Assembly (NCBI GenBank): GCA_964035545.1
Contig: OZ037765.1
Coordinates: forward strand, 33,169,504 to 33,233,503
Length of the DNA stretch: 64,000 nucleotides
Source: Bugula neritina
Taxonomy: Eukaryota; Animalia; Bryozoa
Direction: 5' to 3'
The notes below the pieces were generated by a model, which made no database searches, was not told the origin of the DNA, and worked only from the letters and a program-made list of their open reading frames with translations. Shown in pieces: positions 15,158-64,000 of the stretch. Position 1 is the first letter of the stretch; every line of letters starts with the position of its first letter. The translations under genes and the position numbers were made by a program.

Positions 15158-18100
15158 TCACAGTTCGTCTGTTTGTCGGTTGGTGTCGAGATGGAAAAGT
15201 GACGTCTTACGACGAATAGCTCTTCTCTTGCGCACAGAGTCTTTTGCAAGAGAGGAACGATTAAGTTGACCCTTTTTCATAAGAGAGTCATAAACACTTC
15301 GCCTCTTTCTTTTGTTATCTGGGTAAGTTAGTCTGAAACGACTGCGGTGGGCGGAGCTCTGTTGGGGAAAATAAAAAATGTATAGCCTACGATAAAGATA
15401 ATGAGTTACAGGAAAAATTGGCCATAAGATAAAATGGATTGCATAATTAAATGAGTTACATAGTGAAACAAGTCACACGATGAAACGAGTCACATGTGTT
15501 CAAGGAATTGTAATCTAGCATTTACTTACTTATATACATTAAAGATCAGTAAATACTTTTGTGGTGGGTGTATTAAATGCAGTAGGATTAAAAAGTGAAT
15601 CAGCTAAAATAGTTAAGGTTTTATATAATACATACTTTGATAAATTGGGGAGAGCCAAATAACACCCCTTCTAAATTCTTTAAATACCCCAAGTTGGTTA
15701 GACCTCCTTCTGTAAAAAAAGTAAACATCATAGTCTCAGTACATTTTATTCTAAACAAAAGTTGAAAATGAATAAAAACTAAACATAATAAGAACATCAT
15801 TAGGTCACTGTTACAATGAGTATTACTATAATTAGCAAGTTAATGTCTTTATTTATATCAGCTGATCGCACTGCATGGCACGTAACAAATACTTACTAAC
15901 TTTAGGGTGAAGTACTAACTATAACATATAATTATATTGTACTTTATGCATTCACAACTTACAAACAGCCTTCTACTTTTCTAATAGAATGGTTTCAAAT
16001 TAAGCCAAATAACTATTCTTATAAAACCAATTTAAATATTGCATTGAATTTTATTTATTGCTTCATAAAAATTCATATTTATTTATAGTATTAATATTTA
16101 TTACAACTATTAGTTAAACATTAACTAAATTTGATACAAATGATCTGATTGGCTGATTATTTGAGTATAACCAAGTACCACAGCTAATAGAAATAATGTA
16201 ATCATAACAGTTGAAGCACAAGCTCGTTGGCATGACACAACGGTATGCTGCCTACCATAGTCGCTGTCATCATTCATGGAGTAGTAGACTTTGAGATGTT
16301 CTGTGGCAGCGCTATGAGTGTATGAGGGTTGCTGCCATATTGTGTCTAAGTCAGCGTCATCCACACTGATGTCATAGATCCGAACCTGTAGCAGCACACC
16401 AAATGTTGATGAAAACACAGCACAGCACAGCACACGGTGTTATAAAAACTACTTCATGATTTGGTAAAAGAAAATTGCAGATTTTAAAATTTCTTCAAGA
16501 AGAAAAGTAACACACCTTTCAAAATGTGTGACTAAAAATCTATATACATTATGTAATCAATATATCAATTTAAGAGATGTCAATCCAATAAACACAGAAA
16601 TTATGTTTCATGCTTCACAACATTTCATGAAAATTGCAACAATGATGGCTTTTTACCATCTCATATTTTTAGTATAAGCTCCGAGCACTACAAATTATTG
16701 ACCAAACAGAATTTCATGTATACTATATTAAGCAGCAAAAATCCAAGGGCTAAACTATAGCTATTGAGTTGTTTTCTCTATTCTTAAGACAGCACATACT
16801 TTGCTGTTGTCATGGAAACATAACAACACTAAATATCTACCAGCTCTTATAATTTAGATTACCTCATCAATGTAGCCTGAGAAATAAAAACTGCGAGATC
16901 TGCCCAGATAGAGAGAGCGGTCCTCCGTCCCATTCCAAGTGTATGGTTCAACATCCGATAGGCTCACTGTGTTGCTACCATTCAGCAACATTGTCAGTAC
17001 GTGATCTGTGGGACATATTATCTTTATAATACAGCTGTAGAAAGCTAATGCTTGGGAAACACATAAAATATGGTTGACTTGGGTTGATTTAGTTTTTAGA
17101 AGACAAATCTTGAAAAAACCAGCTTCTACTAAACACTAATAACTTATTCTGAGTGATGAACAAACAGCTGTGTGCATTTATTATGATTAGCCAACATCAC
17201 CTAATTTTCTAAAATTAATATATTTCTTTACTAACAATAATATATTATTTATGAATAATGTGATGAAAACAACTTATCTCGCTTAATATAGCATCATATT
17301 AAATCCCATAAAATATGCTTTGACGTATGTAACTTTTAAGGAGCATGCATATAAAATATTCCAGAATGCAGAGTTGCCTTCTCAGAGTAAGAGAAAGTAA
17401 CTACGAAAACACTATTATAAACCTTCAGCATCATATCTGTAGAGGACATGGTGCCAGCCATCTTTGTTGAGGGGACGACTCTGAATAAGCTGAAATACAT
17501 CATGTCTTCCAACTAAGTATCCACTACTGTTTACTGACAGGCAGATTAGCTCAGTTTCTGTACACAACAGCGGGTATTCAATGGCGGGGTAGTCCGTAAC
17601 GTATACCCACATGCTAACAGTGAAACTGCAACATAATAAAGCATAAATAGCTGTTACATGCTCTACTCTATAAACTTTGGCAGAAACGCAAACTCTTGGA
17701 GATTTGTGTTTTGTCTTTCTTCTTACATTAAAAACTTCAAACTAAAACTAAGTTGCTGTGGGGACAGCTCAAATAGCTGAGCTCAGTCTAAGTGTAATAA
17801 AATTAAAGCTAATGCAATTCAATAAATAGAATTGTAGACTCAGTACCTATAATTCACAACTCATGGTCACACAAATTTCTATGTATCACATTGGAGTCAG
17901 GTGTGATTTTCGTAGCTTATGTTCTATGCAGACATGCACGAAATTAATCTTGGTTTACCAACAAGAAGATTTACCAGACCAAAAATTAAAAATTTAAGCT
18001 AAGGAAATCTAGTCATTAAACTCGTAGTACTATTCTACATGAAATCAGGGTTCTAGAAAGTTCCGTGAGAAGCACCTTTCCAGGATGTCAATCTCGGACT

Positions 18101-18160
18101 CCTTGATGGATCCAACATAGACGTAGTCAGTCACTTTGTTCAGCTTCAGGGCGTAGTTTA
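15158..18160 (-). other. Mega-TSP sub-region: LamG/ConA-like domain and basic C-terminal tail
   Basis: NYALKL.., SFTVSMWVY.., [28 protein letters not shown] (LamG_3/pentraxin-like signature), followed by ..[21 protein letters not shown]. Confidence 0.8.
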
Positions 18161-21100
18161 CTGTATTCATGCACTTCACCTTCAAGTTAGACCAGATTCC
18201 AAAGTCCTGTTTGAAAGTGAACAAACCCACCCGACCTCCACCAATAGTTGTATCATAAACATTGCCGCTATCAGTGATCAGTGTTTCTTGCTGTTTAATT
18301 ACCACCCTGAAACACCAACACATCAAAATATTTATGATATTATTTGTAATCATTACAAAATTTGATAAAATTTTACTAAAAATCTGTCAAGAATTAGTTG
18401 AATAGAAAAAGATCAACCACCAAAGTAATTTCTTTTCAATTCATTTCACAGATGGTCTAAATGCATGACAGTAGTGGACAGATCTCACTAGAAGTTGTAA
18501 AACTAAAACTACTTGTTTAAATATAATATAACTTGATAGTTAGTATTATTCTGGATTATAACATTATTGCCATTTAATACCGGATTATTATGCATACATA
18601 CCAGATTTTAGGTAAAATGGCACAAATGAAAAAGCAGGTAAAACACACTGATGTTAATGTTTCCCAAACCCCCTGCTTGAAACCCGAACCCTCAACCCTT
18701 AATTCCCAAACCTAAACTCCCCCTTCCGAACTCCCTAACCCTAATATTGGAAATGTGCCATTTTTATTTACTTTGCCATTTGCGCCATTATTACCTATGC
18801 AACGTTTACAGGACACCTACATACCAACTGCATCAGCCTAAAGCAATTTAGCAGTTGTCTTCCCACTAGTAAACAAAAAATTAGCCATTACATTAATATA
18901 TGTACTAGAATATTAGCATACTATAAACTTTAATAAAACCTTGTATTATCCAAACATGAAGTAAATGAATATACTTCAACACCTTTGATACATGTGCTGT
19001 CTCACCACACCTGCGGCACGACATAAAGGGGAGATTACTCTCTATACACTCACCTCAATAAATACCACAGAGCAAGACTATAACTACACACCTGATTAAT
19101 CCAATCTCAGGTCTGTGTTTAATATGAAACTTGTAGCTTGTTTTACACTCCCAATTTCTTAGCCAGCGATCATGATATAAGATACTAACGTGGTCGGTAT
19201 CCACACTGCTCCACACACCTGAGGCTAGGTCATAACCTGGATCCACAGCCGAGTTCACCAACTGAAGAACATTAGATTCACATACCATGACATCATCTCA
19301 AAAATATAATGTATGAGTCATGCAGAGTCAGTAAATGAGTCACATGAACTAATTTGAAGTTATTGAAAAACATTTCTTTCAGATGCTATCTGGACTAAAA
19401 GAAGTAAAGATTATTGCTTAGAAATAAAGAAAACTAGTATTTTGGTCAGTTTATGCTATTCTATGCTTTTACCATAACATCTTTGAGCTCTTAATAACAA
19501 TGATTAAGGTCCATTTTATGATATCTACTTTTGCAGGTATATTTATGGGGTAATTTTTAGCTGGAATCCCACAAACAATATGGCTGTCAAAAGTATTCAT
19601 TACTTCTATAAACAAATGTTTTCATTTAGCTTATAATCACTAGCTCACATTCAAGATAAAGTCATAACAATTCCAACTGTTAGATGTTATGTAATATACC
19701 TAGTAAGACACAGATTGCTGCAGATGCATATATAAGATAGTAGAAAGTACAATATTCTATATCCACCACCTTGATCTGCAACCCCTGTAGTCCAGGAGTG
19801 TAGTCAGGGGGATAGTTCCTGTGGTTATGCTTCCAAGTAGCCAAGTAGAACTTGCGGTTGCTCTGGTATCCAAACACAAAGCCCAGGTACCCGTCACAAG
19901 TGTCGGAGTTGGCAAATACCGTCCCCGTATAGTCCATAGCATCGTAGGATGTGTCACCTAAATACACATTGTATAGTAATATGCTTTGCATGGGAAAACA
20001 GTGAATTCATTATAAATATCATGAGATGACAAAGCTTAGAAAGCTCAAGTAGGTTTTCATTTAAAATAACACGAATCTGGGACCAAGCAATATAAATAAA
20101 TACTTATTAACTTTTCTCAGCTGATAATTTTTTCAATAGCTTACTAGTACCAGTTAAAACAACTAAAAACATGTTTTGTTAATATAACAAAAGCAAACAC
20201 GGCTCCTTATAAAACAGTCAATTCTCACTCACTCAACTGTTCCACTCACCAACCAAGATGGCGGGCATATCCGTCTGCATCAGTTGTCTGACTTCTCTGC
20301 CATCATGGAGGACAAGCCAGGCCGGATCTGGAGCATCTGCCAGACTGGGGTAGAGGTTAATGCTGGTGTGACTGGAGAGGTCAGTGGTAGTTATGAATGG
20401 GTTGGATGGACAGTGGTCATCCTTATCTATCACTCCGTCTGCATCATAGTCCAACTCACACTCATCTCCTATGTAGTCCTCTACATAATATACAGACACG
20501 TGTGTGCCTATCGCTCATTACTCAGACTATAAAACTATAGTCTGACTCATATTTCTATATACTAGTCCTATATAATACTGATTGTAGCATTTACCATCCA
20601 TGTCGCCTTGCGAGGGGTTCACCACATACGGGCAATTATCGTTGTCATTATCGATACCATCATTATCGATATCTGTATCACACCTGTCTCCGATATCATC
20701 CGAGTCGGTGTCGGCCTGTTCGCTGTTAGCTGTATACTCACAGTTATCCAGAGAGTCTTGTATCCCGTCCCCGTCCGCATCATCTGTGAACACAAGAACT
20801 CAGGTCAACACTGGCTTGTCTGTTGGCAGACATAGGATGCTAACAAGGAAACAGGGCATTGCAGGTGGGGCTTGTATATTCTTAGCAAGAACTTATGTTT
20901 ATAAAATGTCTGTTCATTTAGTCAATTTACAGCAGAATAAAGCAGTATCAGGTGAGTATAATTTACTGATAAGATTTTGGTTGAAGAAAAACAGACAAAA
21001 AAATTCTATTTTTGTAAAATCTAAGCAATAAAAGTAACTTGCCAATTAAACAAAAACCCCAAACTTTCAAATAACCAGCAGAACATAAACTCAACAACAA

Positions 21101-27100: not shown

Positions 27101-30100
27101 CTGAGGCCTCCATCCACCAGAGAAACCTGCTGCTAGGCCACCCACAATCGGCTCCAGTGTCAGCGCATTGAGCCGGGCTCTGCTGGCAGCAGCATACTCT
27201 TGTTCAGTTGATGCCGTCATCAGGCTGTCTCTAACCCACGCGAACTCTATTCCCACGCTTCCATCACACGCTGAGTTACATAATAGTAGTACTGTGACTA
27301 CTATGACTAAAGTGACTACTATGGCTACTGACTATTACTGCTGTGAGTACTGACTATGACTACTAATAATAGTACTATGAGCACAGTGACTAATAAGACA
27401 ATGACTATGACAATGAATAATGTGACTATGAATAATGTGACTATTACTACTGTGACTGGTATGACTACTATAATTATGTCTGCTATCACTACTATAACTA
27501 TGAATATGACTTTTGACTGACTCTTGACTATTACAACTATGACTATAACTACTATGACTACTACAAGCTGACAGGTACCTACCGAAAGGTTCACTGTAGT
27601 ACCCCGGCACCACGGCCCTCAGCTCCCCTGTGTTCTCATCCACCTTCTGGTCACTGGGTATAGCTGAGAACCAAGTGTCTAGTATACAGGTATTGGATAT
27701 CTCATACGTGACGTTAGCGGTGGTGCCCCGAGTGGGGGAACCCTTGTCCGTTATGACCACAGTATAGGTTAGGTTGGTGTTTAGAGGGTAGATTTGTCGG
27801 TAGATGTCGAGTGTGTTGTTGGCAATCTCAGAGAAAGGTGGACTGTGTAATGATATAGTGAGGACAATAATGTACTGGTAGGTAGATGAATAGATGCTGA
27901 AACACACACCATACACATAGAGCTGATCTTTAACTTATAAAACGAATAAGTTACAAAGATAAATTGAAGGATTTAAATTTGAATTTTGTATTGTCAAGGG
28001 AAACCTTAGCTCAGAAGGCGTGGAGTTTATCACAATTATAATTTGTGTTGAAGCTTAAGATGAAAATCATCATTAAAAATGGTTACATAAAATATATAAA
28101 TTTATTACAATTTTGGAGATTTTTAAAATATTTGAACATAAAAATTATATTTGGGAGTTATCATCTCATAAGACAGTTGACTGTAGAGATGTTATTCACA
28201 GCTAACCTTAGTTCAGGAATTGTCCTCTGATAGATAAGGACAGCGTTGGAGGTGCTGTCGGCATCAGTGGCGTTGAGTTTGAGGTAAGGTTCAGGGGTCA
28301 TTGGGGGAACTCCTTTGACAAAATATTCCCTGATGTCCAGCAGGGGGCAATTGTCGTTAAGATCATTTAAATTCACCTGTAAATAATACATTCACCTGTA
28401 AACAATACATTTAGCTGTAAATAATATATTTAGCTGTAAATAATATATTTTCTTGTAAATAATACTAATTATTCAGAAGTTATAATTATTTTGATGATAA
28501 AAACAACTCAGGGCTAGATGCTGTCAGCAGCGCTATACAAAGTTGCTTAGAAAACTGCAATCAGCAATAAAACATCACAAGATTTACTTACAATAACTAA
28601 CTTATGATTCATAAGATGACACATAATATAAGTAATGTCTGACACTTTTATCTCACTGAGTTGACACATTATATATACTAGTATTACTACCATCATTGTG
28701 AAGAGACAACTGAAGTGGTCTGGCCATGTGGTAAGAATGGATGATAACCGGCTACCAAAAAAGACCATGTGCTCTGAGCTGAACACTGGAAATCGCTCAC
28801 AGGGTGGTCAGAGGAAAAGGTATAAAGACACTCTACACGAGAGCCTTAAGCAGTGTTTCATTCGACCACAGACCTGGGAAGTTCAGGCCTTGGACAGAAA
28901 AAATTGGAGAACTGTTGTGCATCAAGGGACAGCGATTTTTGAACAACAACAACGCCAAAAACGAGAGCACAAACGGTTGCTAAGGAAAAACAGGGAGTTA
29001 TGCTCTGTTACACACCCATCAGTGACTGACTCTAGTAACATTTGTCCTCACTGTGGCAAATTATGCCGATCTCGAATTGGGCTTGTGAGTCACCTCAGAA
29101 CTCACAACCTCTAGTAGGATTTTACGGATTTTCGAACTGGAACGGATTACGGATCACGGCACAGACTAGGGCTTGCAAGCAGACATCATACTCGTCACAC
29201 GAGGGATTGCTGACACACACTAGTATTATAGTGAGTTGACACATTACATACACTAGTATTATAGTAAGCTGACACATTAGATATACTAGTATTTTAGTGA
29301 GTTGACACATTACATATACTAGTATTTTAGTGAGTTGACACATTACATATACTAGTATTATAGTGAGTTGACACATTACATATACTAGTATTATAGTGAG
29401 TTGACACATTATATATACTAGTATTATAGTAAGCTGACACATTACATATACTAGTATTATAGTGAGTTGACACATTACATATACTAGTATTATAGTGAGT
29501 TGACACATTACATATACTAGTATTATAGTGAGTTGACACATTATATATACTAGTATTATAGTAAGCTGACACATTACATATACTAGTATTATAGTAAGTT
29601 GACACATTATATATACTAGTATTATAGTGAGTTGACACATTACATATACTAGTATTATAGTGAGTTGACACATTACATATACTAGTATTATAGTGAGTTG
29701 ACACATTACATATACTAGTATTTTAGTGAGTTGACACATTACATACACTAGTATTATAGTAAGCTGACACATTAGATATACTAGTATTTTAGTGAGTTGA
29801 CACATTACATATACTAGTATTTTAGTGAGTTGACACATTACATATACTAGTATTATAGTGAGTTGACACATTACATATACTAGTATTATAGTGAGTTGAC
29901 ACATTATATATACTAGTATTATAGTAAGCTGACACATTACATATACTAGTATTATAGTGAGTTGACACATTACATATACTAGTATTATAGTGAGTTGACA
30001 CATTACATATACTAGTATTATAGTGAGTTGACACATTACATATACTAGTATTATAGTGAGTTGACACATTACATACACTAGTATTATAGTAAGCTGACAC

Positions 30101-33100
30101 ATTATATATACTAGTATTTTAGTGAGTTGACACATTACATATACTAGTATTTTAGTGAGTTGACACATTACATATACTAGTATTATAGTGAGTTGACACA
30201 TTACATATACTAGTATTATAGTGAGTTGACACATTATATATACTAGTATTATAGTAAGCTGACACATTACATATACTAGTATTATAGTGAGTTGACACAT
30301 TACATATACTAGTATTATAGTGAGTTGACACATTACATATACTAGTATTATAGTGAGTTGACACATTATGTATACTAGTATTATAGTAAGTTGACACATT
30401 ATATATACTAGTATTATAGTGAGTTGACACATTACATATACTAGTATTATAGTGAGTTGACACATTACATATACTAGTATTATAGTGAGTTGACACATTA
30501 CATATACTAGTATTTTAGTGAGTTGACACATTACATATACTAGTATTATAGTGAGTTGACACATTACATATACTAGTATTATAGTGAGTTGACACATTAT
30601 ATATACTAGTATTATAGTAAGCTGACACATTACATATACTAGTATTATAGTAAGTTGACACATTATATATACTAGTATTATAGTGAGTTGACACATTACA
30701 TATACTAGTATTTTAGTGAGTTGACACATTACATATACTAGTATTATAGTGAGTTGACACATTACATATACTAGTATTTTAGTGAGTTGACACATTACAT
30801 ATACTAGTATTATAGTGAGTTGACACATTACATATACTAGCATTATAGTGAGTTGACACATTACATATACTAGTATTATAGTAAGCTGACACATTAGATA
30901 TACTAGTATTATAGTAAGCTGACACATTAGATATACTAGTATTATAGTGAGTTGACACATTACATATACTAGTATTATAGTAAGCTGACACATTATATAT
31001 ACTAGTATTATAGTAAGTTGACACATTACATATACTAGTATTATAGTGAGTTGACACATTATATATACTAGTATTATAGTGAGTTGACACATTATATATA
31101 CTAGTATTTTAGTGAGTTGACACATTACATATACTAGTATTATAGTGAGTTGACACATTACATATACTAGTATTTTAGTGAGTTGACACATTATATATAC
31201 TAGTATTATAGTGAGTTGACACATTACATATACTAGTATTATAGTGAGTTGACACATTACATATACTAGTATTATAGTGAGTTGACACATTACATATACT
31301 AGTATTTTAGTGAGTTGACACATTACATATACTAGTATTATAGTGAGTTGACACATTACATATACTAGTATTATAGTGAGTTGACACATTATATATACTA
31401 GTATTATAGTAAGCTGACACATTACATATACTAGTATTTTAGTGAGTTGACACATTACATATACTAGTATTATAGTGAGTTGACACATTACATATACTAG
31501 CATTATAGTGAGTTGACACATTACATATACTAGTATTATAGTAAGCTGACACATTAGATATACTAGTATTATAGTAAGCTGACACATTAGATATACTAGT
31601 ATTATAGTGAGTTGACACATTACATATACTAGTATTATAGTAAGCTGACACATTATATATACTAGTATTATAGTAAGTTGACACATTACATATACTAGTA
31701 TTATAGTGAGTTGACACATTATATATACTAGTATTATAGTGAGCTGACACATTACATATACTAGTATTATAGTGAGTTGACACATTATATATACTAGTAT
31801 TATAGTGAGTTGACACATTACATATACTAGTATTTTAGTGAGTTGACACATTACATATACTAGTATTATAGTGAGTTGACACATTACATATACTAGTATT
31901 ATAGTGAGCTGACACATTACATATACTAGTATTATAGTGAGTTGACACATTACATATACTAGTATTACAGTGAGTTGACACATTACATATACTAGTATTA
32001 TAGTGAGTTGACACATTACATATACTAGTATTATAGTGAGTTGACACATTACATATACTAGTATTATAGTGAGTTGACACATTACATATACTAGTATTAT
32101 AGTGAGTTGACACATTACATATACTAGTATTTTAGTGAGTTGACACATTACATATACTAGTATTATAGTGAGTTGACACATTACATATACTAGTATTATA
32201 GTAGGTTGACACATTACATATACTAGTATTATAGTGAGTTGACACATTACATATACTAGTATTATAGTGAGTTGACACATTACATATACTAGTATTATAG
32301 TGAGTTGACACATTATATATACTAGTATTATAGTAAGCTGACACATTAGATTTACTAGTATTATAGTAAGCTGACACATTAGATATACTAGTATTTTAGT
32401 GAGTTGACACATTAGATATACTAGTATTTTAGTGAGTTGACACATTACATATACTAGTATTATAGTGAGTTGACACATTACATATACTAGTATTATAGTG
32501 AGTTGACACATTACATATACTAGTATTATAGTGAGTTGACACATTACATATACTAGTATTATAGTGAGTTGACACATTACATATACTAGTATTATAGTAA
32601 GTTGACACATTACATATACTAGTATTTTAGTGAGTTGACACATTATATATACTAGTATTTTAGTGAGCTGACACATTACATATACTAGTATTATAGTGAG
32701 TTGACACATTATATATACTAGTATTTTAGTGAGCTGACACATTATATATACTAGTATTATAGTGAGTTGACACATTATATATACTAGTATTTTAGTGAGT
32801 TGACACATTATATATACTAGTATTTTAGTAAGCTGACACCTTGACTGTGATCTGACCAGTGAGAGCAGGTACTTTGAGGTAGTCAATGACCTCTACAATG
32901 AGCGTGTAGTAAGTGGAGACCTCATAGTCAACTGGTGAAAACAGAGTAACAAGCATGGTTTCCGTGGTAACCTCAAAGATCTCTACACCAGTCGCGTTAT
33001 CTACAAAATAGAGATTGGTGTAAGCTGCTAATAAAGATGTTTATACCCGTACTACCAATACTAATACTTTGTAATACTGATTATGACACCCTACTGTACT

Positions 33101-36100: not shown

Positions 36101-39100
36101 ATACTTGATGGGCAAAGAAATATCTCCCAACTCAGTTGACACATTCTTTCCTACAATAACACTATTTTTTATATACTATCCTATATACTCTCTTACAGTA
36201 TATACTCTCTTATGCAATATCTTATATACAGTGACCTGTATGATGACTATAATAAGAAGATAATTTACATAGGAGTTATCTGCACATGAAAATAACCGAG
36301 AGATGTTTAGCTTGTACCAATAATGTGAAGTTCAGTAAACAAAAAAATAAAACCCAACTTCAAGAAACAGACATGAATTCAGTTAAATACTTTTAATAAC
36401 AAATCTGAATGTGCTTCAAAATTCAGCAACGAAATAAAGAAATGTTAGCTACAAGTTATCACATTTTTAACAAAATATTCCACATTGTAATAAAAACTAA
36501 ATTATAATGCAAAATACAAACACAGTAACGTATTATAAGTATAACTATGAGTATATTGCATTGCATTCAATTAAGAGTTATAAATATTATGATGTACTAT
36601 TTCTGTCACAATGTAGTTTAAACACAAAGCAAAACCCATTTACAACCAGTCTACTGAGACACTGATACACAGAGATACTAGAATGAACTGTAGCAGACGT
36701 ACGTGTATCGAGTAGAGAGACAAAGCTGACAGGGGAGCTGGCAGCAGAGTGATCGCTGCCGATACGGAGATACACAACACAGATGTATATAGTGTTGTCT
36801 AACACCCCCTCAGACTCGAAGAATGTGTGGTTTGCTGTTCCGTTGACCGTAGCATTGAGATCTACGCCATTGGCTAGTGGAGTCCAGCATTGTACAAAAA
36901 AACTACAAGTAGAGATGTGTGAGCAGCACAGGGAGGCAACTACGGAATATTTATACAAAGTAGTAGGGGGTGTTGTAGAAGTTAAGGCTCTATATCACAA
37001 AAATAAAGAAAATTTAATATCTATAATAAAATGACCCAAATGTAGAGCATGCAGTGCTATGAAAAGTATTTTGCTTCTGAAGTTTTTGATTAGACAAATT
37101 ATAAAATATACAGTGCAAATAAATATGACTGTAAAATTTTGCTTAATTATAACTCCTTAAATACGATGAAAATAGTTAAATAAAATTGTCAGATTTTGTT
37201 TGAATGGTAAACACACTGAGTAGTTAGTAGCAATTTAGAATTTTCTGCCAGCAACAAAAAATTCTTTTTTTAAGTCAAAGTAAGCTTTCTAAAACAATTC
37301 AATTTATCTAAGTAAAAATAATTATTAAAAAGCTTCACTGACCTGTAGTTTGTATAATCAACAATTTCCACTCCACTCTCATTGTAAGCAGACCAGTTCA
37401 GGTCTATCACATTGATGCTGGGTTGACTATAACTCAGATTAAATGGAGCACACGTAATGGTGGTTGGATCTCCTTTGTACCAGCTAGAGGAAAGCAGACT
37501 AACGCCACTAGTTAAGGGAGGATAAGAGCACGTCGCCGCACCATCGACTGTGATATTAGGATATAGCAGGGAATCATAAACAGCACAGCCACATTGCAGC
37601 GACGTTGTGTCTAGACTAACGCTACCCATACTGATGGAAGTAAAAGCATTTTCAGCTATTGTGGAAATTGGATTGCCCGAGAAATCGGCGGTTAGTTCAA
37701 GGGAAATACTATCGGAGCCTCCAATCTTAGGGATGTGGTATAAGTGATTGCCAGAGAAATCTATGCTAGTCAGCGAATCACAGTTGTCAAACAGACCGGC
37801 AGCTATGAAGGTCAGCTGATTATCTCGAATAGATAACGTCTGCAGAGAGACAGCGTTGTCCAGCAGGTCAGCTTGAAGATGGGTGATCTGGTTAGAGTCG
37901 AGAACCAAACTCGTCATTGTAGTTTCGGTATCGAATGAGTCATCCGGGATTTCACTGATGAGATTCCCCGTAAAGTCAATGACGTCTAGACCAAGAACAG
38001 AAATGGCTGAGCCAGGATACTGAGTCAGCAAGTTGTTCTGTAAGTTGAGGACGCCAACCGACAGCCCTACAAACGTCACTGGAAGCAGCGAGGATAAACC
38101 GTTGTCGTTCAGAGAAAGAGTAGTTACCGAAGACGCATTGAACATGGCGCCCAAGATGTCTGCCAAACCATTATTAGATAAGTCGACAGATGAGTAACTC
38201 ACTTTGAACGCAGCTTCTTCGACATAAGTGATGAGATTATGGCTGAGATCTAGTTTATTACCAGAAATATCGTAGAAAGAGTGACTCGGAACATGTCTGA
38301 TCTGGTTGTAACCGAGATAAATGTAGGAGTATGTGCCGGTATTAAACGCGTATTCTCTCAGATATTTCACAGCATTTCCTGTCAAGTAGAGGTATGATAT
38401 GGAGCAGTCGACAAAAGCATTTGAGTCGATGTAAGCAATTTTATTATCCCTGAAGTAAATATGAGTTGCAGACGTCTGGTTGAATGTATCCGTCTGTATC
38501 GAAGTAATCATGTTGCTGTCTAGAGTCAGAAAAGTGAAAGTGATGTGGTGAAAATCTTTAGAGGTCTTTGAGAGCTCTGTGAGTCTGTTGTGACCTAAAT
38601 CCAAAGCATACATAGAAGAAAGATGGCTGAAGGTGTTGTCCCCGAGGTAAGCAATCTCATTGTTACTCACGTAGAACCTGTCTAGAGCTGTGCAGTCGGG
38701 AAACATAGAGCTGTTGAGCCAACTGATCCGATTGGACGTCATGGACAAGTAGCTGAGGCTGGTACAGTTTTGAAATGTCGTAGGACTGATTATTGATATT
38801 CGATTGTCATCTAAGAAAAGTTGTAGGAGATTGGTCAATTGGGCGAAGGTGCTGGTGTGAGTGAAGTCTATTTGATTACTCCGCAGGTTCAGGATTGTGA
38901 GGGATTCTGGGAAAGCATTATCCTCGATGGTCACAATTAGGTTGTTCTACAAGACACATCATCTTTTATAGATAGTGTACAAATATACTGAGCTGTAATT
39001 CGTACCATTCCAATGCGTATGCAATTGACTAGGACTAAGACTGAGTCATTACTCTAATTATCAAAAGCCAATAACATTCTCATAAAATTATTATATAAAT

Positions 39101-53903: not shown

Positions 53904-55761
53904 ATGAGGGTGTTCCAGTTGAGAAGGAAAGAGTTGATTACGACAGTAGGCTTCATACTGGTGATATCATGCATAGCCATGTTGCAATACGCGGTGACGG
54001 GAAGGGGCGGTGATCTAACGGGATACGTGAAATACCCCGACAACCTCAACACCTTCAAATTGTATGAAGATGCGACGACAGCCTCGCCAATCGGACCTAC
54101 CCTCCACAAGAAGGTGCAGAGGGAGGGGACGCATGCCAGACGCCACCTCTTATACGGATCAATAGTTGACAGCAGAGGAATTGTGGCTAGCATTACTCAT
54201 AATGTTACGTCTGAGCTGATCTTCTCTTTCTCACCCACCGCTGAAGAGCACTTCAAAGCCAAACTTGTGGATCCGAATCACGAGCAGCAGGTGTACGCCA
54301 ACAGCCCGGCAATGATCTGGGACGGCAAGAAGTTTATTGTCATCATGAGAATGTGGCTTGACCAGGAACACACCATCAAGAAGACTAAGAATATATTCTC
54401 AGACAACTACCTCTACACCAGAACATACAACGACAAGATGGAGCCTCTAGATGTCAGTGGAAAAATATTGGGAATACCCACGAGAGTCCTGGAGACTTTA
54501 GGTGAGTGTAAACCTCAGGCTAGGAGTTGTATTCAAGTATTGCTGCTGGGCAACATTTTGGCATAAAAACAATAGTATTAGAAGAGACAACTCTTAATCA
54601 AACTATCAATGGTAATCTCAAAAATTCTTTGATATAAAACATATTTTTTAAATCTCAGTGCTTTACAAAATAGAAAGGACAACATTTTGGTCTAAATATG
54701 ATTGTAATAATCTAATAGAACAGACAACTCCAGATCTAAATATTGTGATGGTAATTTAAAGGGCCTTAAAATCTCAAAAAATTGTTAATCTCAGTGCTTT
54801 ACAGATTATAAAGGTTCCTAGGCACAAAAATAACAAATTACATCAGCAATTATTTTGGCAGACTGCAAACTTGTTCGTATTGTATAACTCAATACTAAGA
54901 CACTTGATAAATGACAGCTGACCAATAAAAATTTGTTTTACAGGAGATGGACCAATAGAACCAAGAGCATTCCCCTTCTACAACAAGCTATACCTCTCTT
55001 TCAACAACGCCCTCTACGTTGGTAAGAAAGAAATGGACACCACAATATTCTGGGACTGGGAGGGAGACAGATTCGTGATGCCGAAGATAACAGACGGTCA
55101 GCCGAACATCCAATCGAGACGAATAATGCCGAGAGACAAACACTGGTCTTCCTACATGTTTGACGACAGCAACTACATGATATACAGCGTCGACCCTCTA
55201 CGAATAATAAAATGTGACAATAACTCCGTGTGTGGGTTCTACCAGAATTCCGCCAAACCAGACTACAGATTTATAGATTTGTTTGACTGTCTGAGAGGCG
55301 GTACACCCACCCTACATTACCGAGACAATTTCTTCATAACCATCACACACGTGACTCTGTTCAAAACCGGCTACAAGAGATATTACACGGTGAATATAGC
55401 CGTGTTGAGAGCGGAGAAGGGAGCAAACCATGAGATAGTATACTTGAGTTCACCTCTTCAGTTTGACGAGTCTATAATGACTGAGACACCAATAATACGG
55501 ACCAGGTGGATAGAGGACCCCTTTTTCTTCCCAGTGAGTCTCCTGCTAGAGGATGAGGACAATATAGTCATAGGGGGGCATGTGAACGACCACAGTGCCT
55601 ACCTATTCAGAGTTAAGGGTATTAAAGCCCTGATGGACAGCGTTATAGCTCAAAGCAAATCTCTAAGTAAAGATGGCCCAGCTAACGGCGTGCTTCACAA
55701 CCTAGCTAGGTCATATGCTGCAAAACAATCAGGGTACACTTTTGAAAAACCTAAAAATTAG
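53904..55761 (+). CDS. Type II membrane glycosyltransferase-like protein, beta-mannosyltransferase (GT91/BMT)-like beta-propeller, paralogue A (about 471 aa)
   Basis: Exons 53904-54501 and 54944-55761 (GT-AG, phase 1). Short basic N-tail and TM segment (ITTVGFILVISCIAMLQYAV); motifs YANSPAM, GDGPIEPR, RDKHW, IYSVDPLRIIKC, LRGGT, FFFPVSL. The family call is from motif recall, not a search. Confidence 0.75.
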
Positions 55762-56899
55762 TAGTGTGCTTTATTTTTTAACTTAAGTCATTTAGATTTT
55801 GTTATCACCATTTTTTATTCTTTGGGAATTTTACAAGGGAACAAATAAACAGCCAAAATATAAAAACACTTCAATTTTATTACTATTTCAAATTAATTCA
55901 GCTGTGTCACACTTGGAATAAATTTATTCTGACATAGGAATAACGCAATGACCTACGTGATGTTGGAATCATACCAACATGTCAAAACAGAGAAATCACG
56001 CGTAGAAGTGTTTTGTGACGCATGCATTAGAAGTTGCAGTGACCTTACTCTGAATATATTACATTATCATTACTACACAGGGCAGGCTTAGACCAATCAG
56101 CTGCATAGCATGCAGAAAATTCCGGAAAGATTGGAATAATAATTACTTTAATGAAATATCTTAGTTCGAGGCAGTTTTTCTTGGTAGTCTATCATCCAGA
56201 TATAAATTATGCAGCTATTAAAGGGCAATAAGAAAGACACTGTGCAGTTCATGTTTTCTGATGATTTAGGTTGAAATTCTACAACATGCACATACATACT
56301 TTCTAAACCAACACTTCAGTAGTACCTATGCATACAAATAGGAATACACTGTCTATCTCTACTAATTAGTGTAAAGTATTTGTATAATTAATTTGAAAAC
56401 TCAAGCATGGAATATGTTACCTATGCAAATATTTAAACTTGAGCACTTTAGGAAGCAAAAATTAAGGTGTTTTAGGAAGCAAAACAACTTTTAATAAGCT
56501 TTACTGCAGGTAAAAATGAACTAATTATTATTCATTTTTCAAACTAGACATTAATTGAAGAAGTCAAGTGAAACCACCTGTTATCTATTATTGCTTAAAT
56601 GTACCTACCATTGCTCTACTCTAAATTCTAGCATTGGATACTCAAGGAAATAAATAACCAGTTTTATGGTACATTGTTGAGTTATAATTGCTTAATGCAA
56701 ACTTGCCTATTGCATGATGTTGTGCTTGAAAACTGCAAGAGAAAATTTTTTAGGTAGCCTACTATTCACATTGAAATCAGCGATATAATGGAAATAGAGT
56801 TGGAATTTGTTAAAGTCAGCTGAGAGTCTGACAGTGAGGGTTCGGCAGCAGTTTATTGGTTAGATGCTGGTGGGAGACCTGTGTGCTCATGGGTTCAAC

Positions 56900-57131
56900 T
56901 CCTGGCAGCAAGGGGAGGTAAGTAACATAACATCCTGGCAGCAAGAAGAGGTAAGTGACAAAACATCCTGGCAGCAAGGAGAGGTAAGTAACAAAACATC
57001 CTGGCAGCAAGGAGAGGTAAGTAATAAAACATCCTGGCAGCAAAGGAAGGTAAGTGACATAACATCCTGGCAGCAAGGGGAGGTAAGTAACAAAACATCC
57101 TGGCAGCAAGAAGAGGTAAGTGACAAAACAT
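56900..57131. repeat. 33-bp minisatellite (CCTGGCAGCAAGGAGAGGTAAGTAACAAAACAT), 7 copies
   Basis: Read directly; every unit contains AG|GTAAGT on the plus strand. Confidence 0.92.
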
Positions 57132-59424
57132 CAAGTAGCGCTTAGTGCTGATAGCAAAAGCCCGTAAGGGGTTCTCTTGAGAATGGAGACTTGAAACAAA
57201 CGTGATTGTTTCTGGTATCGAAGTATAAACATAATTTTCTAATAGGATCAGCATCACAACATTATCCTCACATGATTATAGTATGACATTAGAGTTTTAA
57301 ACTGTAATAATCCCATTATCATGTCATTAGCTGTAATGACACACAATTATACATGCATTAGTAAGTCATTACTAACCACAATATAGAGTTATACATTCTG
57401 CACTACTTCCGTATATGTAAGGTAACAATTTCAGCTCATCATGCTGTTCATGTCAAAAAGAGTAAATTACTATTTAAAGAATTAGATAATTTGATAATGT
57501 AGTTAAATAACTACAGTGGAGTGTATTATTTTACAGGAAGAGGTAATAAGGAGGGGCTTTCCTTTAGCCAAATGAGTCTAGAATCTTGCAGTGGTCACAT
57601 GCTTCCTTTTGCTCAAAGTGGTGAATGTTTACTGGCACAGCGGTGACTATATTGCAAATTGCTAGCTGAAAGAGATATGAAATAGTTAATATCTGAAATG
57701 CTTAGTTTCAGCTGAGCCATTTTTTCCTAACTTAAGCTCATGTCAAGTTGAAGAGATAGTCATGATACTATAATATGAAACTGGCATCATCTATATTAGT
57801 CATAAAATAATTCTAAAAATTTTCCACTAAGGCTATATGTAGGGAAAGTAACTCCAAGGTAACTCTATATTCTTTAAAAGAATAGCCTTTATTCTATAGT
57901 TTGAAAGAACGTTGAGACAGGGGGTACAGCATGAGCTTCAAAATGTTGTGAAGAAATTTCGATTTGATTTCTATTTCAACCTTAGAATGTAAGAACATGT
58001 TGGTTTCAAAAAACTTTGCAAGGCACCAATACTTGCGCTAATATATATTTATTTGATATTCTTGGGTGGTTATCAGAGTATAAAATGTACTTAGAAATGT
58101 CAATGTTGTATATAACTTGACACTTGTTGAAGACTAAAGGGAAGAAATGTTGAAAATAAACGTCAAGTAATTTGTTTATAAAATTCTTATGTGTGTCTGC
58201 CAAAAATGTTATTAAAATATTATTTAGGTGCACCATAGTAAAAGTTTGCATAGGAAGCCTTTCTATTGTGCAAAAATAAACTTGAAATAAAACTAAGGCC
58301 ATTTTTTTTATAAATGCTTTAAAATCACAGTTCTGTAAATTAAATATCAGCATTAGAGGTCTCGCAAAAAGAGTGTGAAAACTAATATTTGATGAAAGCA
58401 ATAAATAAGGACTGGAGGAGATTATAACCTAGTGTCTGTGAATGGTAGGAGGCGACCTAGTATAATATTTAGTGTGGAGCACAACACTTTATGGACAAAA
58501 TATCTCTCCGCCTCAAAATCAAACTCCTACTTGATAAATTCTATTTTTTCCAAAACACTACATTCTTCTTAACCGCAATAAATGAGAATTTGAAGGTTGT
58601 AAAGTTATGAATAATGCATGCATGGCACAAGCGGAGTAGAAACAAAAGCATTGATGAAGTGCTATACAATCATCATACACTTGCAATTTATAAAGCTTTC
58701 GATGACAGCTATAAGCGCGTGCCCACTCAACTATACAAAATATTTCCCACCGACAAATAATCCTATTGATGTAAGGCTCTCTATAGACATAGTATTTATT
58801 CGCTTGCTATACGAGCCATGCTAAGCAGTCTATTGTGATTACTAGTAGAAAGAAGACGCATGAAATGAATCACTAGTGAGACTGAGTCATACCATACTAG
58901 TAGTAACTAGTAACCAGTGCTCTCAGTAACTCAGTGCTGGTGAATAGAGAGAGACTTTATAGCTTGATGTGAAGATGCAGTAACGGTACAGCCACAGGTA
59001 AGTTATTAATCTCAGTACTATTAGACTGTGGGTGTGACCTGGTAACGACTAATGTCTGCTGGTATATCAGGGCATAACTGCAACTTTTCGCTCTGCTTTT
59101 AGTAGACATAAACTAGATAGTAACCTTACAGTAAAGAACCATTTTTTTAATTGATACAAAAAATAGATTTCAATAAGCTTGGCTATGGAGCTATGTCAGT
59201 ATGTGTGATACATTTCATTATACATGCTTTTTACATATGCCCAACTTCATGACATTATGTAATCATGTGAGTATAACTTTCAGTGTATCGTTTTTGAGAA
59301 GAATTGGGTCACAGATATTCCTAGGAAATGAGAAATTTTACTAAAGTCAAGACAGTAATGTTGATAAGATAGGATTGTCCTAGTAATTTAGAGATCTGAT
59401 ATCACAGACATCGTGTTTTCCAGA

Positions 59425-61511
59425 ATGACTTGGAGAATAGCAAGAAACAGAAACTCTGTGGTTCTGATACTCATAGCCTTCGTCATCTTCATGATATATT
59501 TGATGCCAGCCAGCAACCAGTTGTCAGTGAGTCCAGTAGAAACACATTTCACACTTTCCTCTAAGTATGAGTCAGTCAGCAACAGTGACCAACATATTCA
59601 TGCTGCTGATATGTTTCAACACAAGTTTAAAGTTGAGGGTCACAGGTTTGGAGAACAGGGAACAGTGCAGTATTACCAACACTCTCTAGAATCTTCTGTC
59701 ATTCACTCCTTCTCACCATACACAGAGGACAGAGTTAGGGAGATCATGTTGGAGCCCAGACATGAGCAGAGAATCTATGCTAACAGGTCTGTCTTCTCAT
59801 TGGCTCTTCTTATTGGCTGAGACTGACCGATTATCTTCCAATGCAATGTGCAAGATTCTGGTCAGATTTAAGCTAATCTGTGAATTTATGTTGGGCTTTC
59901 AATTTCTTTTTAGAAGTACTTTTTGCATTTGATAATAATCTTTATACATTAACCACTTATGGTAGGTATAAGTCTTGAAACTGGTAAAGCATACTATCAA
60001 GTTTTAACATTAATTGAGAGTAGAAAAAATGAAGCTATTCTTTTACAAAAACATCTGTTCAATTTCACACTTTTTTTACTTGCTTGTGTTACTAAAGCTG
60101 ATTATTATTCAAGAGGCATGCATGGGTGTATTTTAGCCTGTGATTCCTGACAAAAGGTGGCCCTACCTTGATTGGTGTAAACTAATGTAATGACAAGGGA
60201 GAACAATTGAAACTATTCCAACTAGATGTCTGTTTGTCATGTATGCTAATTTATCAGGCAGCTTTCGTAGCTTGTACTTTATTTTCCACCTAGTGAAAAT
60301 TTGAATTTAAAATGAGTTTAGGGCCTGCTGCACGCATATTGAAGCATTAACTGACTGAGACATTTGGTTTAGAATATTTTAGCCCGCAATTTATAGACGG
60401 TTACTACTATACCATAATGAACATTGTGCTAGAATAATCTGTAGACACTAGACAGTTACCAATATATCACAACATATGTTTCAGCCCAGCCATACTGTGG
60501 CACAAAGGAGAGATCATATGTGTGATGAGGATATGGCTGGAGAAAGAGAAGTACATGGAGGAAGGAGCTCACAAACCACCAAATGACTTCAACGACAACT
60601 TTCTCTATACCCAAAAGTTCAACAGGCAAATGAAGCCAAAGACACCCGGCAGTATATTAGGCATACCTACACCTCGCCAGTGGTTAATAGGTGATGGCCC
60701 TATAGAGCCTAGACTATTCAAAACTGATGATGAGAATGTGTTTGTATCCTTCAACACTGGAGTTTACCTGCAGGATGGCAGAGCACTAGACGGTACGTTC
60801 ATCTGGGACTATCTACGACACAAAACATTGGTACCATCAATCAGAGGTGGTTCTCCAATTCAGAAAAATGTGGATCCCAACAAGATTCCACGAGACAAAC
60901 ACTGGACACCATACAACGACAACAACACATTGAAAATGGTGTATAACCTTGACCCTTTGAGGGTGCTCACGTGTGACCTTAACTTCTCGTGCCACTTTAA
61001 CCATTTTGAGGGACCCAAAAACTATAAATTCACTCAGTACCAAGACTCTCTTAGAGGTGGCACCCCTTGGGTCCTCTATAAGTATCCCTACTATTACTCT
61101 ATCAGTCACTCCACCCTCTTCAAAAACCCTTCCTCTGACAGAATCTACACAATAAACCTCATCGTGTACAGAGCTGCGCCTACACCCAGGGTTGTGTACC
61201 TCAGCGGACCCATACAAATTCATGAGAAGCCGATGAACGACGTACCAATAGTGAGATATAATTATATTAGGGACCCATTTTTCTTCCCCGTTAGTCTGGT
61301 TGAGGAAGATTCAAACTCTATTATTATTGGTGGACATATCAATGACTACAGCAGCGTTCTGCTGAGAGTGAAAGGTGTTCAGAAGCTACTTGAAGAAGTA
61401 GTAAATGACGATAGGAAAATGCCAGCACACACCACTGGCCCACCCCTAGGAACTTTACATAATAGCACAAAAAAATTCGCGTCCAAACAGACTAATAGCA
61501 CATTCTTTTGA
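59425..61511 (+). CDS. Type II membrane glycosyltransferase-like protein, GT91/BMT-like, paralogue B (about 462 aa)
   Basis: Exons 59425-59786 and 60485-61511 (GT-AG, phase 2, restores YANSPAI). TM segment VVLILIAFVIFMIYLMPA. Shares SFSP, ILGIPT, GDGPIEPR, PRDKHW, DPLR, LRGGTP, DPFFFPVSL and IGGHxND with paralogue A. Confidence 0.75.
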
Positions 61512-62620: not shown

Positions 62621-64000
62621 CTGTAAATTAAAGAAGGAATTTTTATAGGTCAGATTAGAGTGAGGCAAGGCAATTAGTATTAAGTATGTCAACTTAATGT
62701 ACTTATAAATAACATTTATATCTAAAAATATGGGGGGCTGAGTGAAAAACACAATGAATCAGAAAAACAAGTTGTGTCGCATGTAAAAAGCCAAGTTTAT
62801 CGAAGTTGTAGCCACGTATGTATATCCTAGTGAATACCTTAGCCATGACACATAAATGAAGATGGAAGTGGCCAAATTTTCACCCGAAGTAATAGTCACT
62901 TTATCTTTAAAATGTTAACCCCAAACTTGCCAACTCTTTTAAGCAGACTAAGAATGGACTTTGCCACACAGTGATTCCAAGAAACACGTTTATAAAGTTG
63001 ATGCATGCCTATATGTTCACTTAGGCAACAAACTTAAAATTTTTTTAGAAAACTGGAATATTTTCTGCATGTAGATAGTTGCTATGGCAACCATATAACA
63101 TATCAAACAGTTCCATACATCAAATGGAAGAATGATCAGTTAGTTAGCTTATAAAATAGCCAGTTTCTAAAACTTGCTAAAACTAATGAAAGGGGCACTC
63201 TACAGTGCCCCCTCTGTTGCTACTAACAAACCTGTATGGAGAGTAGTCTAGTCTTGAGCTGGTAGGCATCTCTAGCCATGGCAATCTGCACCCACTTAGG
63301 AGCGTTGGGAATCATGTATGACACTGACACTCTGATTACTATCAGCAGGTGCTACAAGTGGCAACAGGATAGCTATACATTACAGCATCTCAGTGGGATC
63401 CATATAACATATACTTCTTGCTACAAACTAACCGCTTCAGCTCATATTGTCTGCTCAATATATTCAACTTATACACAAAATTACCAACTTAAAGCTTGGA
63501 ACAAGAATAAACTAAAAACTTTCATTAAGTAGTAACCAGGGGAGGGGGTTCAACTACCTCCCAACTTTTCACGTAACACGTAACTCAATTACAGAAATGT
63601 TACTATTGTACCTGCAGGCTATGGTAAAAACGTATTGACAGTTTAAACTCTAATGCATAAAAGTCAAAATGTAATAATTAAATATTGATATTCCAGAAAA
63701 TAAAATCTATGTTGTTGGTAGAAAAGTGCCTTAATTGTTAAATAACTCATTTTAATGCAGTTCTGCCTTCATAAGACACGTAATATACTATTTATTAAAT
63801 ATTACGTGTAAAATGATGTTGGAGAAAAACATAAAATCAATTTCATGCAGTTTTTTGGCCGTTCAACTAAAAAAGTTATTAGGGTTCTTGGCAGCCACAC
63901 CAAAGATAAAGTCAGAAAATAACTAGAATATTATACTTTAGAGATGACAGCTGAATATATAAGAAATATAAATGACCAGATCTTCATTTTAATACGGACT

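What the first reader, a model, noticed from the sequence alone, without database searches (positions are those of the whole stretch)
53904..61511. Tandem pair of fungal-type beta-mannosyltransferase (GT91/BMT)-like genes in an animal genome
Seen: two paralogous ~465-aa type II membrane proteins sharing GDGPIEPR..RDKHW..Y(S/N)xDPLR(I/V)xxC..LRGGTP..Y. Established: this motif order (GPEDPR, KNW, PLxILKC, LRGGT) characterises the Golgi beta-1,2-mannosyltransferases of Candida/Komagataella, which are related to the five-bladed beta-propeller GH130/GT108 enzymes and are not part of the standard animal glycosylation toolkit. Inference: an uncharacterised, possibly horizontally acquired Golgi glycosylation activity that has expanded in this invertebrate lineage.
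Basis: partly seen in the sequence, partly recalled or inferred. Interest (0 to 1): 0.85.

Follow-up and report, generated by a model that had tools for sequence, protein, structure and literature searches.

The report
Yeast-like sugar transferases in marine invertebrates
Two neighbouring genes of the bryozoan Bugula neritina belong to an ancient family, for which I found no paper, of membrane-anchored enzymes that resemble the yeast enzymes that add beta-mannose; the family is shared by bryozoans, brachiopods, annelids and ribbon worms, and its rebuilt active site suggests these animals make a sugar linkage nobody has yet traced to an enzyme.

Summary
Observation confirmed: two intact two-exon genes (471 and 462 aa, 38% identical), each with an N-terminal membrane anchor. 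Host: Bugula neritina; pair, introns and neighbour are conserved in Watersipora. The Watersipora orthologue folds (pLDDT 93.5) as a five-bladed propeller closest to GH130 mannoside phosphorylases (Z 22.9); 57 of 58 homologues hit Pfam BMT (GT91), but the window's exons stay below the family cut-off. Best reading: Golgi inverting GDP-sugar (probably GDP-mannose) transferases making a linkage other than yeast beta-1,2-mannan. No activity or RNA evidence; no paper found; no earlier scan note on this family.

The parts
53904..54501 (+). Gene A exon 1 (codons 1-199 plus 1 nt): basic N-tail, membrane anchor, stem, start of propeller (NSPA, MRMW, DNYLY motifs)
   Evidence: orthologue P0058 in Watersipora
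53934..53990 (+). Gene A predicted transmembrane anchor (res ~11-29)
   Evidence: hydropathy 2.07
54502..54943 (+). Gene A intron, 442 nt, phase 1, inside the Gly before DGPIEPR; same position in Watersipora
54944..55761 (+). Gene A exon 2: rest of propeller and C-terminal helices, stop at 55759-55761
   Evidence: PF12141 E=0.0017, 17.5 bits
54949..54966 (+). Gene A GPIEPR motif; Glu205 sits at the GH130 catalytic-Asp position
55132..55146 (+). Gene A RDKHW motif (EKNW in BMT-like relatives)
56900..57132 (.). 33-bp tandem repeat (7.1 copies) in the spacer between the genes; not part of either coding sequence
58998..59423 (+). Possible intron in the 5' UTR of gene B (CAG|GTAAGT donor; TTCCAG acceptor one base before the ATG); inferred from sequence only
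59425..59786 (+). Gene B exon 1 (codons 1-120 plus 2 nt): basic N-tail, membrane anchor, stem; absent from the NCBI protein EB796_012970 (328 aa)
59455..59514 (+). Gene B predicted transmembrane anchor (res ~11-30)
   Evidence: hydropathy 2.70
59787..60484 (+). Gene B intron, 698 nt, phase 2, inside Ser of ANSPA; same position in Watersipora, different from gene A's intron
60485..61511 (+). Gene B exon 2: most of the five-bladed propeller, stop at 61509-61511
   Evidence: PF12141 E=0.0002, 20.6 bits; 99% to B. neritina EB796_012970
60696..60713 (+). Gene B GPIEPR motif; Ile194-Glu195 in place of Glu-Asp
60891..60905 (+). Gene B RDKHW motif

Best explanation
Genes A and B are bryozoan paralogues of an old lophotrochozoan subfamily (GPIEPR/RDKHW) of the GH130/GT108/GT91 five-bladed-propeller superfamily. 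SHOWN: intact conserved genes, N-terminal anchor, propeller fold (orthologue model), invariant residues at the blade starts, homology chain to PF12141, presence in four phyla. INFERRED: the anchor puts the propeller in the Golgi lumen; basic residues (B: Lys259, Arg311, His329) hold the diphosphate of a GDP-sugar, most likely GDP-mannose, Asp408 holds the sugar, and the carboxylate at the catalytic position (Glu195 in B, Glu205 in A) acts as base in a single-displacement, inverting transfer giving a beta-mannoside. Because the Glu that orients a mannose acceptor for beta-1,2 linkage is Ile, and the Asp-to-Glu change comes with EKNW-to-DKHW, acceptor and linkage probably differ from yeast beta-1,2-mannan. 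The substrate (glycolipid, O- or N-glycan of the body wall or secretions) is unknown. The family probably entered, or was kept only in, an early spiralian/lophotrochozoan ancestor as an intron-poor gene; bryozoan copies gained introns separately.
For: Fold: pLDDT 93.5, pTM 0.92; top five wide-search hits are GH130 mannoside phosphorylases or relatives, Z 21.4-22.9, Leishmania 2b4w Z 19.4, GH43/62/32 at most 17.4 (Foldseek agrees). PF12141 is the only consistent family, 57/58 members, best E 2e-8. Profile links: A1 to P0194 prob 99.7; P0194 scores 119 bits on PF12141 and TM 0.88 to ascomycete Bmt1 models. GPIEPR aligns to GPEDPR, which aligns to GVEDPR of GH130 7FIP (E=0.19). In GH130 the Asp is invariant and essential and the Glu before it sets beta-1,2 specificity (PMC4599007; PMC12814180). 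Ile-Glu, Asp-Lys-His and Arg-Gly-Gly are present in 73/73 subfamily members. 54 of 57 full-length homologues have an N-terminal anchor. Clade support 100/99 across four phyla.
Against: No activity data for any member. Window exons are below the PF12141 cut-off. Residue mapping to GH130 is anchored only for the first two blades and by a weak match; phosphate-site mapping rests on motif order. No GH130 with Glu at the catalytic position is known to me. A Golgi GDP-mannose supply in these animals was not checked. The model is of the Watersipora orthologue, not the window's proteins.
Confidence: 0.55

Rival explanations
1. They are ordinary beta-1,2-mannosyltransferases like Candida Bmt1-9; Ile-Glu is a tolerated variant of Glu-Asp.
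For: PF12141 is the best family; same topology; same motif order; some animal relatives (Lineus P0122) keep GPEDPR/EKNW.
Against: The beta-1,2-determining Glu (PMC12814180) is Ile in 73/73; E141Q and D142N both abolish activity in GH130 BT3780; scores below cut-off.
Confidence: 0.12
2. They are Golgi transferases for another nucleotide sugar (for example GDP-fucose, GDP-L-galactose or a UDP-sugar); the coordinated active-site changes mark a donor switch.
For: Linked invariant substitutions (ED to IE, EKNW to DKHW, new invariant Arg and Asn); position before the catalytic acid varies widely across the animal family.
Against: All characterised GH130/GT108/GT91 members act on mannose (papers read; own knowledge); the Asp at the mannose-binding position (B Asp408) and the blade-1 Arg are kept.
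Confidence: 0.14
3. They are membrane-anchored glycan-trimming enzymes (beta-mannosidase or phosphorylase) rather than transferases.
For: Closest solved folds are phosphorylases and hydrolases; a Glu could serve a hydrolase; GH130 contains hydrolases (PMC4599007).
Against: GH130 hydrolases replace basic phosphate-binding residues with acids (abstract of PMC4599007), whereas Lys, Arg and His are kept here; sequence kin are PF12141, hardly PF04041; type II anchor is typical of Golgi transferases.
Confidence: 0.13
4. They are catalytically dead glycan-binding or scaffold proteins.
For: The canonical catalytic Asp is missing.
Against: It is replaced by another carboxylate that is invariant across four phyla, and about 30 columns are invariant in 58 homologues.
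Confidence: 0.05
5. On origin (independent of function): the family is an old eukaryotic inheritance lost in most animal phyla, not a horizontal acquisition.
For: Relatives in Euglena, ascomycetes, diatoms (feature-level only) and several unnamed microbial eukaryotes; deep branches unresolved; no bacterial donor found.
Against: Needs many losses (no named hit from molluscs, arthropods, deuterostomes, cnidarians or sponges); catalytic domain intronless in Lingula, Capitella and many contigs, with unshared introns in each bryozoan paralogue; Euglena and one marine clade fall among animal sequences in the free tree.
Confidence: 0.4

Closest known systems
GT91 / Pfam PF12141 BMT (Candida Bmt1-9, Komagataella Bmt1-4)
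   Same: N-terminal anchor; motif order G-P-x-acid-P-R, K-(N/H)-W-x-P, P-L-x-(I/V)-x-x-C, L-R-G-G-T; only consistent Pfam match; linked by profile comparison.
   Different: Scores below the curated cut-off; Ile-Glu for Glu-Asp; DKHW for EKNW; animal hosts, whereas GT91 is described as fungal (PMC8476585); fungal Bmt models were not among the nearest Atlas structures of the orthologue.
GH130 mannoside phosphorylases and beta-1,2-mannosidases (RaMP1 5AYC, Uhgb_MS 9ERH, Uhgb_MP 4UDG, Teth514_1788 9FJ8, BT3780 5A7V)
   Same: Five-bladed propeller, Z 21.5-22.9; SPA/NAA, blade-1 Arg and xDPR motifs align through the divergent profile.
   Different: About 10% identity; bacterial, not type II Golgi proteins; invariant catalytic Asp is Glu here; no PF04041 match in A1.
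GT108 Leishmania mannosyltransferase/phosphorylases (MTP)
   Same: Same propeller fold (2b4w, Z 19.4; that this entry is an MTP is from my own knowledge); precedent for GDP-Man transfer on this fold.
   Different: 6% identity; MTPs are soluble mannogen enzymes acquired from bacteria (PMC10913872); no sequence-level match.

Membership tests
GT91 / PF12141 BMT | PF12141 score at or above the gathering cut-off (28.3 bits) | tested here: not met
   Exon 2 of A 17.5 bits, exon 2 of B 20.6 bits, exons 1 none (searched exon by exon). Six-frame family search of the genome gave no match. 57/58 homologues match at E<=0.1, best 2e-8.
GT91 / PF12141 BMT | Homology to above-cut-off PF12141 proteins over the whole catalytic domain | tested here: met
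   hhalign A1 vs P0194: prob 99.7, E 6.7e-27, 259 columns; P0194 119 bits and TM 0.88 to ascomycete Bmt1 cluster.
GT91 / PF12141 BMT | Type II membrane topology | tested here: met
   Single N-terminal hydrophobic segment in both and in 54/57 homologues; Golgi location itself not tested.
GT91 / PF12141 BMT | GPEDPR motif (Glu-Asp) | tested here: not met
   GPIEPR in A, B and 73/73 subfamily members.
GT91 / PF12141 BMT | EKNW and LRGG motifs | tested here: inconclusive
   LRGG and the Lys-x-Trp core kept; DKHW instead of EKNW.
GT91 / PF12141 BMT | beta-1,2-mannosyl transfer from GDP-Man | not testable with these tools
   Needs enzyme assay.
GH130 | Five-bladed beta-propeller fold | tested here: met
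   Model of orthologue P0004:75-455; Z 22.9 to 5AYC, 292 aligned, rmsd 4.0.
GH130 | Invariant catalytic Asp | tested here: not met
   Glu at that position; Asp invariant in GH130 per PMC4599007.
GH130 | PF04041 match | tested here: not met
   0/58 in A1; 3/24 distant relatives weakly, best E 0.0056.
GH130 | Phosphate-binding basic residues and loop L2 geometry (phosphorylase, transferase or hydrolase) | tested here: inconclusive
   Lys, Arg, His conserved at blade 3-4 motifs but no residue-level superposition was available.
GT108 | Fold shared with Leishmania MTPs | tested here: met
   2b4w Z 19.4, 259 aligned.
GT108 | Sequence-level similarity and soluble location | tested here: not met
   No PDB sequence match; 6% identity; N-terminal anchor present.

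The most novel reading that the evidence does not exclude
A lophotrochozoan-specific Golgi glycosylation pathway built on a propeller-fold (non GT-A/B/C) transferase acquired from a microbial eukaryote before the split of annelids, nemerteans, brachiopods and bryozoans; the GPIEPR subfamily uses Glu as catalytic base to make a glycosidic linkage not yet known from any enzyme, deserving its own GT family, while sister paralogues diversified acceptor specificity at the residue before the catalytic acid.
Probability: 0.3. Interest if true: 0.82.

Novelty: new variant of a known kind. Interest (0 to 1): 0.62.

Why it matters
Propeller-fold glycosyltransferases are described from yeasts (GT91) and Leishmania (GT108); I found no paper reporting them in animals. 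A family kept for over half a billion years in four phyla implies a glycan structure those animals need. Invertebrate glycomics lists modifications, including beta-mannosylation, with no known enzyme (PMC6935376; those examples are molluscs and insects, where I found no member, so this family is probably not their source). The genes give a direct handle: soluble domains can be expressed and screened, and annelid models allow knock-outs. The natural Glu-Asp to Ile-Glu swap also tests how this fold sets linkage, and GT91 has no solved structure (PMC8476585; no PDB sequence match here).

Tried and rejected
Contamination: rejected (35.6-Mb contig, spliceosomal introns, synteny with Watersipora). 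Pseudogenes: rejected (open frames, dS saturated with dN 0.19-0.26). Recent fungal or bacterial transfer into Bugula: rejected (orthologues 42-49% identical in brachiopod and annelids; no relative in GTDB genomes, phages or plasmids; these scans find close relatives only). Viral donor: only one distant, anchor-less giant-virus ORF, not detected by the A1 profile. Paper searches for animal GT91/BMT, and for matching annelid or brachiopod glycans, found nothing relevant.
Full report
1. Observation. Both genes are real. Gene A runs 53904-54501 plus 54944-55761 (471 aa) and gene B 59425-59786 plus 60485-61511 (462 aa), each with one GT-AG intron, no internal stop, one N-terminal hydrophobic segment after a short basic tail, and 38% mutual identity. 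The introns lie at different places (A inside the Gly before DGPIEPR, phase 1; B inside the Ser of ANSPA, phase 2). The host is the bryozoan Bugula neritina: exon 2 of B is 99% identical to EB796_012970. The locus is on a 35.6-Mb contig. Watersipora subatra has the same pair in the same order and orientation, followed by an anoctamin gene on the other strand, as here; its proteins are 61% (A) and 66% (B) identical over full length, with identical intron positions; synonymous sites are saturated while dN is 0.19-0.26. So the genes are functional-looking, host-encoded, and the duplication is older than the split of these two bryozoans.

2. Family and fold. Exon 2 of each gene hits only PF12141 (BMT), at 17.5 and 20.6 bits against a cut-off of 28.3; 57 of 58 aligned homologues hit it, best E 2e-8. 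No PDB sequence matches. The AlphaFold2 model of the Watersipora B orthologue's lumenal domain is confident (pLDDT 93.5, pTM 0.92) and is a five-bladed propeller whose best matches are GH130 mannoside phosphorylases and relatives (Z 21.4-22.9), then Leishmania 2b4w (Z 19.4), ahead of GH43/62/32 (at most 17.4). The conserved motifs SPA, EPR, KHW, RGG and FPV each lie at the first strand of a blade, where this fold keeps its active site. The family links by profile to proteins that pass the PF12141 cut-off (prob 99.7), one of which matches ascomycete Bmt1 models at TM 0.88.

3. Active site. GPIEPR aligns column for column with GPEDPR of the divergent relatives, whose profile aligns weakly (E=0.19, top PDB hit) with GVEDPR of the GH130 beta-1,2-mannobiose phosphorylase 7FIP. 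In GH130 the Asp is invariant and essential (BT3780 D142N and E141Q inactive; Uhgb_MP Asp104; PMC4599007), and the residue before it sets linkage: Glu in beta-1,2 enzymes, Tyr103 in a beta-1,4 enzyme (PMC12814180). Genes A and B carry Ile-Glu. All 73 near-complete subfamily members do, together with DKHW for EKNW, while the Lys, the LRGG Arg, the blade-4 His and the blade-5 Asp are kept. In the wider animal family the Asp is usually kept but the preceding residue varies (E, M, H, Q, L, S, R, V, A and others), which looks like diversification of acceptor or linkage. Bugula's other two paralogues read GPMDPR.

4. Distribution and origin. Named orthologues come from Bryozoa, Brachiopoda (Lingula), Annelida (Capitella, Owenia, Dimorphilus, Ridgeia, Paralvinella) and Nemertea (Tubulanus); they form one clade at 100/99, with the bryozoan copies together at 97/90. 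More distant named animal members are from the same phyla plus Lineus. The profile finds 107 clusters at E<=1e-30 and 1311 at E<=0.001, of which I saw the best 150. The nearest identified non-animal members are two Euglena gracilis proteins; others lie on eukaryotic metagenome contigs, some probably rotifer (inference from neighbours). Scans of bacterial and archaeal genomes, phages and plasmids found no close relative; giant viruses and Chlamydiota hold distant fold relatives. In the free tree Euglena and one marine clade sit among animal sequences with weak support; forcing named animals into one clade is not rejected (AU p=0.074). The catalytic domain is intronless in Lingula, Capitella and many contigs, and genes A, B, Watersipora P0022 and the GPMDPR pair have introns at different positions. 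That fits an intron-poor incoming gene but also retroposition or intron loss. I put an ancient transfer from a microbial eukaryote at about 0.5-0.6 and inheritance with losses at about 0.4; a recent or specifically fungal transfer is not supported.

5. Mechanism. Most likely (0.55) these are Golgi-lumen inverting transferases using a GDP-sugar, probably GDP-mannose, with the Glu as base, making a beta-mannoside of a linkage or on an acceptor other than yeast beta-1,2-mannan. Topology, fold, homology and residue conservation are shown; Golgi location, donor, catalytic role and product are inferred from GH130/GT108/GT91 (that Candida Bmts use GDP-Man is from my own knowledge). Rivals: plain beta-1,2-mannosyltransferase (0.12), another donor (0.14), trimming hydrolase or phosphorylase (0.13), dead lectin-like protein (0.05).

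6. Comparison with what is known. It works most plausibly like GT91/GT108, but membership of GT91 fails on two tested features (cut-off score, Glu-Asp motif), so I file it as a GT91-related subfamily. GT91 is described as fungal and without a structure (PMC8476585; PMC11657238). Paper searches found no report of animal members, though databases already carry automatic PF12141 hits on many of these proteins and an Atlas cluster of mostly annelid 'hypothetical proteins'. The library lacks most subscription journals. Earlier scan notes hold nothing on this family; several name the same host.

7. Limits and verdict. The tandem pair itself is an ordinary duplication; the interest lies in the undescribed four-phylum family and its fixed active-site change. 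Novelty: new variant of a known kind. Interest 0.62.

Noticed in passing
window 59425-59786: The NCBI protein for gene B (EB796_012970, 328 aa) starts at Met135 and lacks exon 1 with the membrane anchor; the public model looks truncated.
   Followed up: yes
G000:C1:7225857-7228848 (-) and G000:C2:23307125-23309370 (-): Two further, multi-exon paralogues in Bugula with the motif GPMDPR (catalytic Asp kept, INW for KNW); they share two introns not found in A or B.
   Followed up: partly
L017:10001-14666 (Watersipora P0022): A third GPIEPR paralogue with four introns at yet other positions; no Bugula counterpart came up in the genome searches.
   Followed up: partly
window 63229-63309 (-) and beyond the window (L008): 3' exons of an anoctamin gene converge on gene B; same arrangement in Watersipora (L006).
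   Followed up: yes
window ~16100-39500 (-): Exons with many leucine-rich repeats (37270-38934), a cadherin-like stretch (~27700) and thrombospondin C-terminal domain (18045-19991), possibly one large mosaic extracellular protein; not assembled.
   Followed up: partly
window 10316-11188 (-): ORF ending in NLVFEGGGAK, like the glycine-rich loop of patatin-type phospholipases; no Pfam hit for this exon alone.
   Followed up: partly
window 28698-29114 (+) and 29122-32886: 3' end of a LINE-like element with a C2H2 finger, next to a 3.7-kb tandem repeat that gives a spurious 1254-aa ORF.
   Followed up: no
P0174, P0169: Euglena gracilis has two members (GPVDPR) with no Pfam hit for P0174; they fall among animal sequences with weak support.
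   Followed up: partly
P0194, L020, L013: Above-cut-off PF12141 proteins, one fused to an FkbM methyltransferase, on contigs whose neighbours (NHL, 7tm_1, RING-LRR) suggest bdelloid rotifers; taxon not confirmed.
   Followed up: partly
L021:2848-3768: A giant-virus MAG encodes an anchor-less 306-aa protein with GPEDVR and AEKNW motifs; many giant-virus proteins share the fold.
   Followed up: partly
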